Of a DNA stretch of 64,000 nucleotides, positions 5,907 through 56,822 are shown piece after piece. Both the position numbers and the translations under genes were made by a program. The DNA is taken from contig NC_058131.1 of the NCBI RefSeq assembly GCF_016433145.1, forward strand, positions 642,406,862 through 642,470,861, given 5' to 3'. The notes under the pieces are model-generated. The model was not told where the DNA came from. It worked only from the letters and a program-made list of their open reading frames with translations, and did not search any database. How positions within the stretch are numbered: position 1 is the first letter of the stretch; each line of letters opens with the position of its first letter. This stretch comes from Gracilinanus agilis (taxonomy: Eukaryota).

Positions 5907-5960
<54 letters not shown>

Positions 5961-16967: not shown

Positions 16968-17056
<89 letters not shown>
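16968..17056. repeat. (GA)n microsatellite
   Basis: Long near-perfect run about 660 nt downstream of exon 4. It reads (CU)n in the pre-mRNA. Confidence 0.98.
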
Positions 17057-24505: not shown

Positions 24506-24523
24506 CTTAGGATACACACAAAA

Positions 24524-24608
24524 AAAAGAAAAGAAAAGAAAAGAAAAGAAAAGAAAAGAAAAGAAAAGAAAAGAAAAGAAAAGAAAAGAAAAGAAAAGAA
24601 AAGAAAAG
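24524..24608. repeat. (AAAAG)n microsatellite
   Basis: About 17 perfect pentamer units. Confidence 0.98.

Positions 24609-29324: not shown

Positions 29325-29382
<58 letters not shown>
29325..29382. repeat. (CA)n microsatellite
   Basis: Perfect run. Confidence 0.98.
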
Positions 29383-32100: not shown

Positions 32101-32248
32101 NNNNNNNNNNNNNNNNNNNNNNNNNNNNNNNNNNNNNNNNNNNNNNNNNNNNNNNNNNNNNNNNNNNNNNNNNNNNNNNNNNNNNNNNNNNNNNNNNNNN
32201 NNNNNNNNNNNNNNNNNNNNNNNNNNNNNNNNNNNNNNNNNNNNNNNN
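32101..32248. other. Assembly gap (148 N) covering most of CPEB3 exon 3
   Basis: Run of N. Confidence 1.
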
Positions 32249-32286
32249 GAGTGCAAGTTAAATGTGTCATAGGGCCTATTCCGGTC
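32249..32286 (-). CDS. CPEB3: CPEB3 coding exon 3, 5' part only (remainder falls in the N gap)
   Basis: Acceptor ttttgtgtttctgtttctAG is followed by GAC CGG AAT AGG CCC TAT GAC ACA TTT AAC TTG CAC TC = DRNRPYDTFNLHS (human DRSRPYDTFNLHS), phase 0. The sequence runs into Ns at 32248. Confidence 0.93.
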
Positions 32287-49778: not shown

Positions 49779-50097
49779 TTTTTCAATCCTTTGTGAATCT
49801 CCTGGAGACAAAGCATACTGAGTGTTTGATCAGTGGACACTCTGGCAAAGATGTCCTATTGCAGACCTTCAGTGTGTTTGTAAAGAAATCATCAGAGTTG
49901 TGAAACAGGGGGTTGAAACCATAATACTCAAAGCATGTCTGTCCTAGTGCTCATTTCAACCAAACAACAGTTGCACCGAGTTGCTGATGAAAAGATGTGC
50001 AGCAGAATTCGCAGATTCCTATGAATCTGACAGGGGCCGCGACGTGAACGCTTCTGCTATGGCCCCCTGTTATCCACTACAACCTCCATATTGCTTT
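49779..50097 (-). other. Candidate cryptic/poison cassette exon containing the ribozyme
   Basis: Acceptor ctttcttcttttcattcacAG at 50099-50098 and donor AAA|GTAAGT at 49778-49773 enclose 319 nt. There is no expression evidence here. Confidence 0.3.
50000..50067 (-). ncRNA. CPEB3 ribozyme: CPEB3 ribozyme (HDV-like nested double-pseudoknot self-cleaving RNA)
   Basis: Minus strand reads GGAUAACA|GGGGGCCAUAGCAGAAGCGUUCACGUCGCGGCCCCUGUCAGAUUCAUAGGAAUCUGCGAAUUCUGCUG, nearly identical to the recalled human sequence. Pairings: P1 G1-C7 with G30-U36, P2 9-16 with 61-68, P3 GCG/CGC, P1.1 C22-G37, P4 CAGAUUC/GAAUCUG. Catalytic C57 is at 50011. Predicted cleavage is between 50068 and 50067. Confidence 0.97.
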
Positions 50098-50699
50098 CTG
50101 TGAATGAAAAGAAGAAAGTTCTATTTATGCAAATAGCTTTGGTCTGAAATAGCATTTCTATGACTATTCACATGTCAATCTGGGCCAGACCCATAGTTCT
50201 GCCTTTTAGAGACTGGATCCAAGCCCTCCAATGAGCCATCCCTACTTCATCTCCCCTTGGTGCTCATGCAGATTCCTGCTGTGTGCCACAGCTATCATAG
50301 CTATTGCCTGCCTACACATCACCAAATAAGGCAGCTCAGATAGTCTTGTCACAGAATGAGGGACAAAAACAAAAGCTACTCAACATATGCCAGGCTGTGA
50401 GGAGAGGTAGGAAAACATCCTCCCTAAAGTGGGAATTAGGGGTAGACAAGCTAGACCCATCTAGAACACAACATGCAAAAGAGTGTCTTGACAGATGCAT
50501 TTAAATATTTCATAAAGATCCAGTTTTCAGTGCCAGAAAATTTTATTCACTATTGCATATGGATATTTACTTTATGCTAAGTTGAATATGCTACAGTGGC
50601 AGTTCAAAGCCTCCAGTAGCCAGTAACACTTCCCATAAAGAAGGAGATATGTTTTAACCTCACCTAGGGTACACAAATGTTTTGATTTGGGCTCCATTT

Positions 50700-53533: not shown

Positions 53534-53690
53534 NNNNNNNNNNNNNNNNNNNNNNNNNNNNNNNNNNNNNNNNNNNNNNNNNNNNNNNNNNNNNNNNNNN
53601 NNNNNNNNNNNNNNNNNNNNNNNNNNNNNNNNNNNNNNNNNNNNNNNNNNNNNNNNNNNNNNNNNNNNNNNNNNNNNNNNNNNNNNNNNN
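53534..53690. other. Assembly gap (157 N)
   Basis: Run of N. Confidence 1.
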
Positions 53691-54601: not shown

Positions 54602-56822
54602 CACTTCCCCAGAACCCATTTACTGTATAATGTGAGGTATCTCAGAGCAAATGAATAATGGAACCTTCGTATTCAACTCTATGCATCTTAAATATAGATT
54701 TTTCTCCCTTGCTAGAATGACTGAATATTGTGATTATCCCCATTCAAAAGAATTTGCAGATGCTTGATGCACTCATAAAAGGAATAAATCTAAGAGGGCA
54801 GTTTCAAGGTATAAATAGATGGATAAAACTGACCAAGGAAAAGATAGGAAATGAAAAAGATGAGAAAACCAAAGTACTAAGATCCTTGTAAACCTAAAAG
54901 CACTTGCTAGCTCAGTAACTATATATCCCCCTCGTCTATCGCCAGCTAATCCATCCTTCACTACACTGCTCAAGTGATTTTTCAAATATGCTACAATTCT
55001 GTTCACATTACTTATCTTTTTTTTTTTTTAATTTCGCAACAGCCAAAGCAATTAACTATTAACACTTGACCAAGGTCTTCAAGGCTTCCTAGAGTCTGGA
55101 TCCAACCTCCCATATTACTGACTTTTTTAACAAAAATTAACTATTCCACTCTCATCCTATCTTCACCTGTATACAAGCCTTGGCCCATAACATTCCCTAG
55201 AAGGGCCAGTTCAGATGCCATACGCTCTCTAAGGTCTTTCCTCATATGTTTACCCCGATATAAGTGACCTCACCCTTCTCAAATTTCTCATACTTCTTTG
55301 ACTGGACCTCTCCTTTGGTTGATCACTTTGTCCCATATATATGACATATATGGGCACCTCCCCACCCACACCCACTAGACTATAAGTTTGTTTAGAATAA
55401 GAAATGTCACTTTGTACCTTAGCACCACACCTTCTACGTGGTAAAAGGTTAACAAATAATTTGTTGAACTGATCATCCAGTGCTTAGGACAGTGGGTAGA
55501 AAAAAGTAGGTTCTTAATAAATGCTTGACTACCTACCTAAACATGCATGAGACAATGAGGAAGTAAGCATTTATTAAGCACCTATGTGCCAGACCCAAAT
55601 TTTAAAAAACACCCAGTTCCTGCTCTTGAGGAGCTCAGAGACTAATAGGAGACAACTGTGTACAAACATGATATATACAGAATAAATTGGAGATAATCAA
55701 GAGAGGGATGGCCCCAAAAGCACTAAGGTCCTTGAATAACCAAATGTAAAAATAATTCAATCCTTCAGTCATAAGACAAGAAAGAGAATTTTTCAACAAT
55801 TTCACTTCTATATTCATAAAAAATTTGAACTGCAATTAATCCGGAACAAAGATCACAAGTCATATGAGAGGGGTGAAATCCAAGTAGCACAGAGAAAGTT
55901 ATTGTTGACAAGGAGTTTACTGACAAGAATCATTGAAAAGTAGTGAGATACATGGTTTCTTGCTTGTAGTTAGAGGGAGAAGTATGAATGTATCAACTGG
56001 GAGTTGAAGATTTGAGTTTCAGTCCCAGTTCTGTGACCTTGGGCAAGTCATCTAAGCTCACTAAGCCTTTGGTTTCTTATCTGTAAAACAAGAAAAATAC
56101 TAGTTTGCACTATTCCAACCCATAGGGTTGTCATTAGGATCAAATAGGATAATAATGCATTGTAAAGTGCTTACATAAAATGAATAGTACTATTATAAAA
56201 GTTATAGAAGGAATTGGCAGGCATTACCTTAAACTCATAGTTGATATGGACAGTCCCTGAAGAAAACAAAGGGGGTAAATATAGTGCCCATTTTAAAAAG
56301 GGGGAGGAGAAAGTTGAAAAATACATGGGAAAAAATAGGGCAAATCACTGAGCAATTTGCAGTCACCAGGAAGAATATAAGGTAGAATAACAATCAGAGG
56401 AACTAAAAATAAATGTTTTTTATCTGATTCTTATTTAAATTTTTTTGGCTAAAACACTTTAGCAGACAACCCCTATATTAAGGCAATTTAAACTAAGGAT
56501 AAGTTAGCTCAAAGATTTCACCATAGAATTATTTTAATTATATAGGGCAGTATTTAAGGTAATGTATGCACTTATTCTTTTTTTAAACATTTTAAGAAAT
56601 AGGTCAAGATAGTCTATCCACTGTCTTAGAAGCCCAGTCTCATCTGTTTCCCAAAGGTCTCACTACAGATTAATTATTAAGATTGATGTTCAATGGTATC
56701 TTCTGGACTGCATGCCGATTTCAATTTGGTAGGGTGGTTTTCAAAAAACGCTTAATGTTTCCAAATGTAAATGTTTTACTAGAGATAATGTACTTATTAA
56801 AAAAACAAAACAAAACAAAAAA

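What the first reader, a model, noticed from the sequence alone, without database searches (positions are those of the whole stretch)
50000..50067. Intact HDV-like self-cleaving ribozyme in intron 2 of marsupial CPEB3
All helices can form from the visible sequence: P1, P1.1 (single C22-G37 pair), P2, P3 and P4. The catalytic C57 and the G1-U36 wobble at the cleavage site are present. It lies about 17.7 kb upstream of exon 3 on the transcribed strand. Co-transcriptional cleavage could therefore compete with exon 2-exon 3 splicing of a translational regulator linked to memory. This is a known, deeply conserved mammalian ribozyme and not a new discovery, but it is the most important non-coding element in the window.
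Basis: partly seen in the sequence, partly recalled or inferred. Interest (0 to 1): 0.85.

Follow-up and report, generated by a model that had tools for sequence, protein, structure and literature searches.

The report
Known CPEB3 self-cleaving ribozyme, opossum copy
This is a real and intact copy of the well-known self-cutting RNA (ribozyme) found in an intron of the mammalian memory-related gene CPEB3; its 67 published positions match the opossum/koala sequence that has already been shown to cut in the test tube, so it is correct but not new.

Summary
On the minus strand, 50067 (G1) to 50000 (G68) is a complete CPEB3 HDV-like ribozyme. It scores 102 bits against Rfam RF00622 (gathering score 35, E 1.4e-27, full model). 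P1, P1.1, P2, P3 and P4 can all form, and the G1-U36 wobble and C57 (50011) are present.

The 67 published positions match the Monodelphis domestica and koala sequence of Bendixsen et al. 2021 (PMC8233481) exactly; that sequence scored 0.94 for in vitro activity. The 100 nt upstream match the published monDom5 flank at 98/100, so the host is a didelphid opossum.

A strong splice acceptor follows 17.7 kb downstream (exon starts at 32286, reading DRNRPYDTFNLHS). The rest of that exon is masked with N, which I left alone.

The competition between cleavage and splicing was shown in mouse with an antisense oligonucleotide (PMC10919898). Here it is inferred.

Small additions:
- The native leader (ACA) allows the same Alt P1 misfold described for human.
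- The distance from ribozyme to exon (17,781 nt) is 1.8 times the mouse distance, which does not fit a simple conserved "kinetic tuning".
- The splice-site-like bracket around the ribozyme, noted elsewhere by this scan, is within chance (about 3% of positions).

Verdict: real, already known, low interest.

The parts
50000..50067 (-). CPEB3 HDV-like self-cleaving ribozyme, 68 nt, G1 = 50067, G68 = 50000. Cleavage is between 50068 (A-1) and 50067 (G1); the catalytic C57 is at 50011.
   Evidence: Rfam RF00622 scores 102 bits against a gathering score of 35. All helices were checked pair by pair. Positions 1-67 are identical to the published opossum/koala sequence.
50068..50078 (-). Conserved leader (AGUGGAUAACA) that is part of the Rfam model. 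The last three nt, ACA, can form the register-shifted Alt P1 with U36-G37-U38.
   Evidence: Model positions 1-11 align. Base-pair probabilities are about 0.7 for A-1-U36 and 0.75 for C-2-G37, against about 0.25 for G1-U36, with native leaders of 10-100 nt. The Alt P1 description comes from PMC8233481 and its supplement.
50068..50167 (-). The 100-nt upstream flank, orthologous to the published Monodelphis domestica (monDom5 chr1) flank. The two differences lie in the pyrimidine tract at 50098-50120.
   Evidence: I compared it by eye with supplement file 4 of PMC8233481. The 23-mer from the published flank matches at 50098-50120 with 2 mismatches, with 0 matches expected by chance.
32249..32286 (-). 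Visible start of the next downstream exon (CPEB3 exon 3 by the mouse/human numbering). It follows a long pyrimidine tract and AG (32288-32287) and reads DRNRPYDTFNLHS in phase 0.
   Evidence: Sequence and translation. Assigning it to CPEB3 rests on the ribozyme's published position in intron 2 and on my memory of the CPEB2-4 family sequence, not on a search result.
32101..32248 (.). Masked or gap stretch of 148 N that covers the rest of that exon and its donor site. I did not fill it.
   Evidence: N-run listing and sequence.

Best explanation
This is the orthologue, in a didelphid opossum, of the mammalian CPEB3 ribozyme. It is a 68-nt HDV-fold (nested double pseudoknot) self-cleaving RNA, transcribed as part of the second intron of CPEB3. 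Once transcribed it folds into P1/P1.1/P2/P3/P4. C57 in the J4/2 junction, together with a bound Mg2+ near the G1-U36 wobble, catalyses attack of the 2'-OH of A-1 on the A-1/G1 phosphodiester. This leaves a 2',3'-cyclic phosphate on 50068 and a 5'-OH on 50067. Because this cuts the intron before exon 3 has been made and joined, each cleaved transcript is lost to productive splicing, so ribozyme activity lowers the output of CPEB3 mRNA and protein. Shown here: the sequence, the pairing potential, the family match, identity with an assayed sequence, and the position and orientation relative to the next exon. Shown elsewhere: in vitro self-cleavage of this exact 67-nt sequence, and the effect on mRNA and protein in mouse. 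Inferred: cleavage in vivo in this species, and its effect on splicing.
For: Rfam RF00622 scores 102 bits (gathering score 35), E 1.4e-27, over the full model, and is the only hit in the window. All five helices, the G1-U36 wobble, C57 and the 7-nt L3 loop UUCACGU are present. The five differences from the inferred therian ancestor are C9U, which keeps P2 as a U9-G68 wobble, and four changes in loop L4. These are the class of change reported as near-neutral. The 67-nt sequence is identical to the opossum/koala entry, activity 0.94, in supplement 4 of PMC8233481. The flank matches monDom5 chr1 at 98/100. The ribozyme is on the same strand as a strong acceptor plus open frame 17.7 kb downstream. 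In mouse, blocking the ribozyme with an antisense oligonucleotide raises spliced Cpeb3 mRNA and CPEB3 protein (PMC10919898).
Against: Nothing here contradicts the identification. Limits on the functional part are as follows. The published 0.94 activity was measured with a non-native leader. With the native leader the nested-fold ensemble favours the Alt P1 misfold over the catalytic G1-U36 pair, so the native rate may be much slower, as it is in human. P1.1 is a single G-C pair, and crystal structures of the human and chimpanzee ribozymes caught it melted (bioRxiv 10.1101/2022.09.22.508989). The plain minimum-energy fold of the 68-mer is not unusually stable (z = -1.5), which is expected because pseudoknots are not modelled. 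No expression or cleavage data exist here for this species.
Confidence: 0.96

Rival explanations
1. The ribozyme is intact but is part of a cryptic (poison or terminal) exon. The unit 50097..49779 is spliced to exon 2 in some transcripts, and the in-frame TAG 9 nt before the cleavage site ends the reading frame. Self-cleavage would then give a short transcript encoding only the N-terminal part of CPEB3, or would mark it for decay. This is the idea in the scan's other note on this window.
For: A pyrimidine tract plus CAG ends at 50098, and AAA|GTAAGT lies at 49779/49778, bracketing 319 nt that contain the ribozyme. If intron 2 is phase 0, as the exon at 32286 suggests, the unit reads KAIWRL then TAG at 50079-50077. 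A pyrimidine tract followed by AG is also present upstream of the ribozyme in the five other marsupial rows of the published table.
Against: By the same simple definition there are 13 such pseudo-exons on this strand of the window, and 2.9% of positions would be enclosed by chance. In placental rows the nearest AG is at about -17, not -30, and follows a poor pyrimidine tract, so the feature is not conserved in position. The mouse functional paper has no occurrence of 'cryptic', 'poison', 'truncated' or 'nonsense-mediated'. No transcript data are available here, and the donor side cannot be compared because the table gives no downstream flank.
Confidence: 0.07
2. The sequence can cleave in vitro, but in this species it is kept for another reason, such as a DNA-level regulatory element or a splicing or RNA-binding site in a conserved intronic block. 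In that case self-cleavage in vivo is negligible because the native leader traps it in Alt P1.
For: Conservation extends beyond the ribozyme. The block CUAUUUGCAUAAA, which contains the octamer motif ATTTGCAT at 50134-50127 (-67..-60), is shared by marsupial rows and most placental rows. With native leaders the Alt P1 pairs have higher predicted probability than G1-U36. Native upstream sequence slows the human ribozyme about 250-fold, according to Chadalavada 2010 as cited in PMC8233481.
Against: High intrinsic activity has been kept along the whole marsupial lineage, with changes confined to L4 and C9U. That is what selection on the catalytic fold predicts, not selection on a linear motif. 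In mouse the ribozyme is active enough in cells for an antisense block to change mRNA and protein levels. The octamer alone is not rare: there are 8 copies on this strand of the window.
Confidence: 0.05
3. It is a chance resemblance or a decayed pseudo-copy with no catalytic competence.
For: None found.
Against: E is 1.4e-27 with a full-length model match. There is no mismatch in any helix apart from the known U21/U38 opposition. The sequence is identical to an assayed active sequence.
Confidence: 0.005

Closest known systems
CPEB3 ribozyme of Monodelphis domestica (monDom5 chr1) and koala, as listed and assayed in Bendixsen et al. 2021, Mol Biol Evol 38:2843 (PMC8233481, supplementary Mammalian_Ribozymes table)
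   Same: All 67 listed ribozyme positions are identical, including C9U and the L4 loop AUAG. The leader is the same (GUAGUGGAUAACA), and 98 of the 100 upstream nt are the same.
   Different: There are two substitutions in the upstream pyrimidine tract (window CTTTCTTCTTTTCATT, published CUUUAUUCUUGUCAUU). The window is therefore either another individual or assembly of that species or a closely related didelphid; I cannot tell which.
Human, chimpanzee and mouse CPEB3 ribozyme (Rfam RF00622; Salehi-Ashtiani et al. 2006 as cited)
   Same: It has the same fold, the same cleavage site context (ACA|GGGGG), the same L3 loop, C57 and G1-U36, and the same place (second intron, sense strand, upstream of exon 3).
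   Different: Position 9 is U rather than C, so the C9-G68 pair of P2 becomes a U9-G68 wobble. The L4 loop is AUAG rather than UGGU. Position 30 is G as in chimpanzee, not the human A30. The distance from cleavage site to exon 3 is 17,781 nt here and 9,931 nt in mouse.
Hepatitis delta virus genomic and antigenomic ribozymes (Rfam HDV ribozyme family)
   Same: It shares the nested double-pseudoknot topology, the catalytic C at the start of J4/2, the G-U wobble at the cleavage site, and the cleavage chemistry (established knowledge).
   Different: There is no detectable sequence-model similarity: no HDV-type Rfam family matches the site even at E up to 10. P1.1 is one G-C pair plus a U-U opposition instead of two G-C pairs, and L3 has 7 nt with an ACGU palindrome.

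Membership tests
CPEB3 ribozyme (Rfam RF00622) | Score at or above the curated gathering score of the covariance model, over the full model | tested here: met
   102 bits against 35, model positions 1-78 of 78, E 1.4e-27.
CPEB3 ribozyme (Rfam RF00622) | Helices P1 (7 bp), P2, P3 (3 bp) and P4 (7 bp), plus P1.1 between L3 and J1/4, can all form | tested here: met
   The pair-by-pair check found all standard pairs. P1.1 is C22-G37 with U21/U38 opposed, as in human. The nested part (P1, P3, P4) is also the predicted minimum-energy fold.
CPEB3 ribozyme (Rfam RF00622) | Catalytic cytosine as the first residue of J4/2 (C57), and the G1-U36 wobble closing P1 at the cleavage site | tested here: met
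   Position 57 is C (window 50011), and G1 (50067) lies opposite U36.
CPEB3 ribozyme (Rfam RF00622) | Seven-nt L3 loop UUCACGU with U21 and the ACGU palindrome | tested here: met
   Positions 20-26 read TTCACGT. The loop is described in bioRxiv 10.1101/2022.09.22.508989.
CPEB3 ribozyme (Rfam RF00622) | Lies in the second intron of CPEB3, in the sense orientation, upstream of exon 3 | tested here: inconclusive
   The orientation matches a strong acceptor plus open frame at 32286. The flank is 98/100 identical to the published opossum CPEB3-ribozyme locus. However, only 13 residues of the exon are visible, the rest is masked, no paper prints that peptide, and exon 2 is not in the window. The gene name therefore rests on orthology with the published locus.
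CPEB3 ribozyme (Rfam RF00622) | Mg2+-dependent self-cleavage at A-1/G1 | not testable with these tools
   The identical 67-nt sequence scored 0.94 (fraction cleaved) in the deep-sequencing assay of PMC8233481, with a non-native leader. It was not measured for this locus with its native flanks.
HDV ribozyme families of Rfam (sequence-level membership) | Match to an HDV-type covariance model | tested here: not met
   No HDV-type family is listed at the site at E up to 10. The relation to HDV is one of fold and mechanism, not of sequence family.

The most novel reading that the evidence does not exclude
The ribozyme may sit inside a facultative exon (50097..49779), bounded by a real acceptor and a near-consensus GTAAGT donor and carrying an in-frame stop 9 nt before the cleavage site. 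In marsupials, self-cleavage and exon definition would then act on the same 319 nt, giving either a truncated N-terminal-only CPEB3 message or a decay target. Separately, the 1.8-fold longer distance from ribozyme to exon 3 would mean that the proposed match between cleavage half-life and Pol II transit time is not a conserved property of the locus.
Probability: 0.08. Interest if true: 0.5.

Novelty: already known. Interest (0 to 1): 0.15.

Why it matters
The CPEB3 ribozyme is one of the few self-cleaving RNAs conserved across therian mammals. In mouse it sets the level of a translational regulator needed for long-term memory. Confirming an intact copy in an opossum adds nothing new, because that sequence has been published and assayed. 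The locus is still a useful comparison point. The catalytic core is unchanged, while the distance to the next exon is nearly double the mouse value. A measurement of the native cleavage rate in opossum would therefore test whether 'kinetic tuning' between cleavage and splicing is real or a coincidence of the mouse gene.

Tried and rejected
- Independent naming of the downstream exon failed. A full-text search for the visible peptide (PYDTFNLH / RNRPYDTF) found no paper. The protein search tools need longer queries than the 13 visible residues.
- The paper that defines Alt P1 (Chadalavada 2010, PMC2890282) is not held. I took the description from PMC8233481 and its supplement instead.
- A permissive Rfam scan of the site for HDV-type families gave only chance-level hits to unrelated families: mir-302, SNORA79 and SNORD14, at E 4.5-7.
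- A permissive scan of the whole window gave one further weak hit, mir-95-like at 55500-55588 on the plus strand (26.5 bits against a gathering score of 67.5, E 0.75). I treat it as chance.
- No tRNA-like sequences were found.
- No ORF of 90 aa or more on either strand overlaps the ribozyme, and none looks like the large Q-rich CPEB3 exon 2. Exon 2 therefore lies outside the window.
- The minimum-energy fold with a 30-40-nt leader replaces P4 with leader pairing. This disappears with 10-, 60- and 100-nt leaders and the model ignores P2, so I do not build on it.
- The 'poison exon' bracket was tested against the window's own background and is not significant by itself.

Full report
**Observation**

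The minus strand of 50067..50000 reads as a 68-nt sequence that starts GGGGGCCAUAGCAGAAG and ends GAAUUCUGCUG. The Rfam scan of the whole window, both strands, returns one family above its gathering score. That family is CPEB3_ribozyme (RF00622), at 50078..50001 on the minus strand. It scores 102 bits against a gathering score of 35, with E 1.4e-27, model positions 1-78 of 78 and posterior probabilities at maximum throughout. A permissive scan at E up to 1 adds only a chance-level miRNA-like hit elsewhere.

- P1 has seven pairs, including the G1-U36 wobble and C7-G30.
- P1.1 is the single pair C22-G37, with U21 opposite U38.
- P2 has eight pairs, from U9-G68 to A16-U61.
- P3 has three pairs.
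- P4 has seven pairs, closed by the loop AUAG.
- Position 57 is C (window 50011).
- The L3 loop is UUCACGU.

The nested part of the structure (P1, P3, P4) is also the predicted minimum-energy fold of the 68-mer. Its energy is not unusual against shuffles (z = -1.5), which is expected because the pseudoknotted P2 and P1.1 are not modelled.

**Identity and host**

Bendixsen et al. 2021 (PMC8233481) collected about 100 mammalian CPEB3 ribozymes with 100 nt of upstream sequence and assayed them. In their supplementary table, the entries for opossum (Monodelphis domestica, monDom5 chr1) and koala carry the same 67-nt ribozyme sequence as this window, and the activity given is 0.94.

The other marsupials differ in the L4 loop: AUAU in Tasmanian devil, wombat and wallaby, and AUAC in brushtail possum.

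The 100 nt upstream of G1 in the window agree with the published monDom5 flank at 98 positions. The two differences lie in the pyrimidine tract, and the published 23-mer finds the window at 50098-50120 with two mismatches, where none is expected by chance. The flanks of koala, wombat, possum and devil are far more different.

The window is therefore from a didelphid opossum. It may be Monodelphis domestica in another assembly or individual, or a close relative; I cannot decide which.

Relative to the sequence inferred for the marsupial-placental ancestor, the window has five changes. C9U keeps P2 through a U9-G68 wobble, and the other four changes are in loop L4. The paper reports exactly these changes as leaving activity high.

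**Gene context**

On the same strand, a long pyrimidine tract and an AG at 32288-32287 are followed by an open frame from 32286 that reads DRNRPYDTFNLHS. The Ser follows from the visible TC, because every TCN codon encodes Ser.

- From the last ribozyme base to the first exon base there are 17,713 intervening nt.
- From G1 to the first exon base there are 17,781 nt.
- No large Q-rich ORF that could be exon 2 lies in the 13.9 kb of window upstream, so the intron is longer than 31.7 kb here.

Calling this exon 'CPEB3 exon 3' rests on three things:
- the published statement that the ribozyme and its place in the second intron are conserved in mammals;
- the match of the flank to the published opossum locus;
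- my own memory that CPEB2-4 proteins carry this peptide.

A full-text search for the peptide found nothing, and 13 residues are too few for the protein search tools. In the membership table I mark this feature as inconclusive rather than met.

**Mechanism**

The fold and chemistry are those of HDV-like ribozymes. The cytosine at the start of J4/2 and a Mg2+ ion near the G1-U36 wobble promote attack of the 2'-OH of A-1. This gives a 2',3'-cyclic phosphate and a 5'-OH (established knowledge; summarised).

For the biological role, the best evidence is from mouse (Chen et al. 2024, PMC10919898):
- The ribozyme's co-transcriptional half-life is about 2-3 min.
- The cleavage site is 9,931 nt from exon 3.
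- An antisense oligonucleotide that blocks cleavage raises spliced Cpeb3 mRNA and CPEB3 protein and improves object-location memory.

For this species it is inferred.

First, the native leader ends in ACA. The supplement of PMC8233481 says the first three upstream nucleotides form the misfolded Alt P1. With native leaders of 3 to 100 nt, the predicted pair probabilities are about 0.7 for A-1-U36 and 0.75 for C-2-G37, against about 0.25 for the catalytic G1-U36. The centroid of the 108-nt fold shows the same register shift. The opossum sequence therefore has the same misfolding potential as the human one. The 0.94 activity, measured with an unrelated leader, is an intrinsic value and not necessarily the native rate.

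Second, at the Pol II speeds used in the mouse paper, transit from the ribozyme to exon 3 would take 4.3-5.1 min here, against 2.4-2.8 min in mouse. If the half-life were the same, only 17-37% of introns would still be intact when exon 3 appears, against 37-57% in mouse. Either the native rate is slower in opossum, or the 'tuning' is not conserved. This is arithmetic on published numbers and not a measurement.

**The scan's other note on this window (s1-171005)**

That note proposes that the ribozyme lies in a splice-site-defined exon. The signals exist:
- a pyrimidine tract plus CAG ending at 50098;
- AAA|GTAAGT at 49779/49778;
- a unit of 319 nt;
- in phase 0, a TAG at 50079-50077, 9 nt before the cleavage site.

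Against the window's own background, however, there are 13 such pseudo-exons on this strand, and 2.9% of positions would be enclosed by one. In placental rows of the published table the nearest AG is at about -17, after a poor pyrimidine tract. I keep this as a low-probability rival that RNA-seq can test.

**Comparison with HDV and verdict**

No HDV-type Rfam family matches the site even at E up to 10. The relation to HDV ribozymes is one of fold and mechanism, not of sequence family.

The element is in Rfam, and its exact sequence has been published and assayed for opossum. It is already known, so interest is low.

Noticed in passing
window 49779-50097, minus strand: The ribozyme is bracketed by an acceptor-like site (pyrimidine tract plus CAG, unit starts 50097) and a donor-like AAA|GTAAGT (unit ends 49779). 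The unit is 319 nt and in phase 0 reads KAIWRL then TAG at 50079-50077. By the same definition there are 13 pseudo-exons on this strand, and 2.9% of positions are enclosed by chance.
   Followed up: partly
window 50127-50134, minus strand (-67..-60 from the cleavage site): The octamer motif ATTTGCAT sits inside a block (CUAUUUGCAUAAA) that the published upstream sequences show in opossum, brushtail possum and koala and in most placental rows. Conservation therefore extends about 70 nt upstream of the ribozyme. The motif alone occurs 8 times on this strand of the window.
   Followed up: partly
window 53534-53690: A second run of 157 N lies in the intron, about 3.5 kb upstream of the ribozyme on the transcribed strand. 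It is either an assembly gap or a deliberately masked stretch. I did not fill it. The ORFs listed across it are artefacts of X residues.
   Followed up: no
window 32101-32248: A run of 148 N begins 38 nt into the exon that follows the ribozyme. It hides the rest of the exon and its donor site, so exon length and reading frame beyond 13 residues cannot be checked.
   Followed up: no
window 55500-55588, plus strand: A weak mir-95-like covariance-model hit (26.5 bits against a gathering score of 67.5, E 0.75). It is most likely chance.
   Followed up: no
window 50068-50077, minus strand: With leaders of 10 nt or more, GUGGA (-10..-6) is predicted to pair with UCUGC (the 3' strand of P2) in some folds. 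This is a second possible leader-dependent misfold besides Alt P1. It was seen only in nested-fold predictions.
   Followed up: partly
window 5912-5957, 16968-17056, 24520-24608, 29325-29382: Ordinary microsatellites, (AG)n, (GA)n, (AAAGA)n and (CA)n, in the intron downstream of the exon. Nothing unusual.
   Followed up: no
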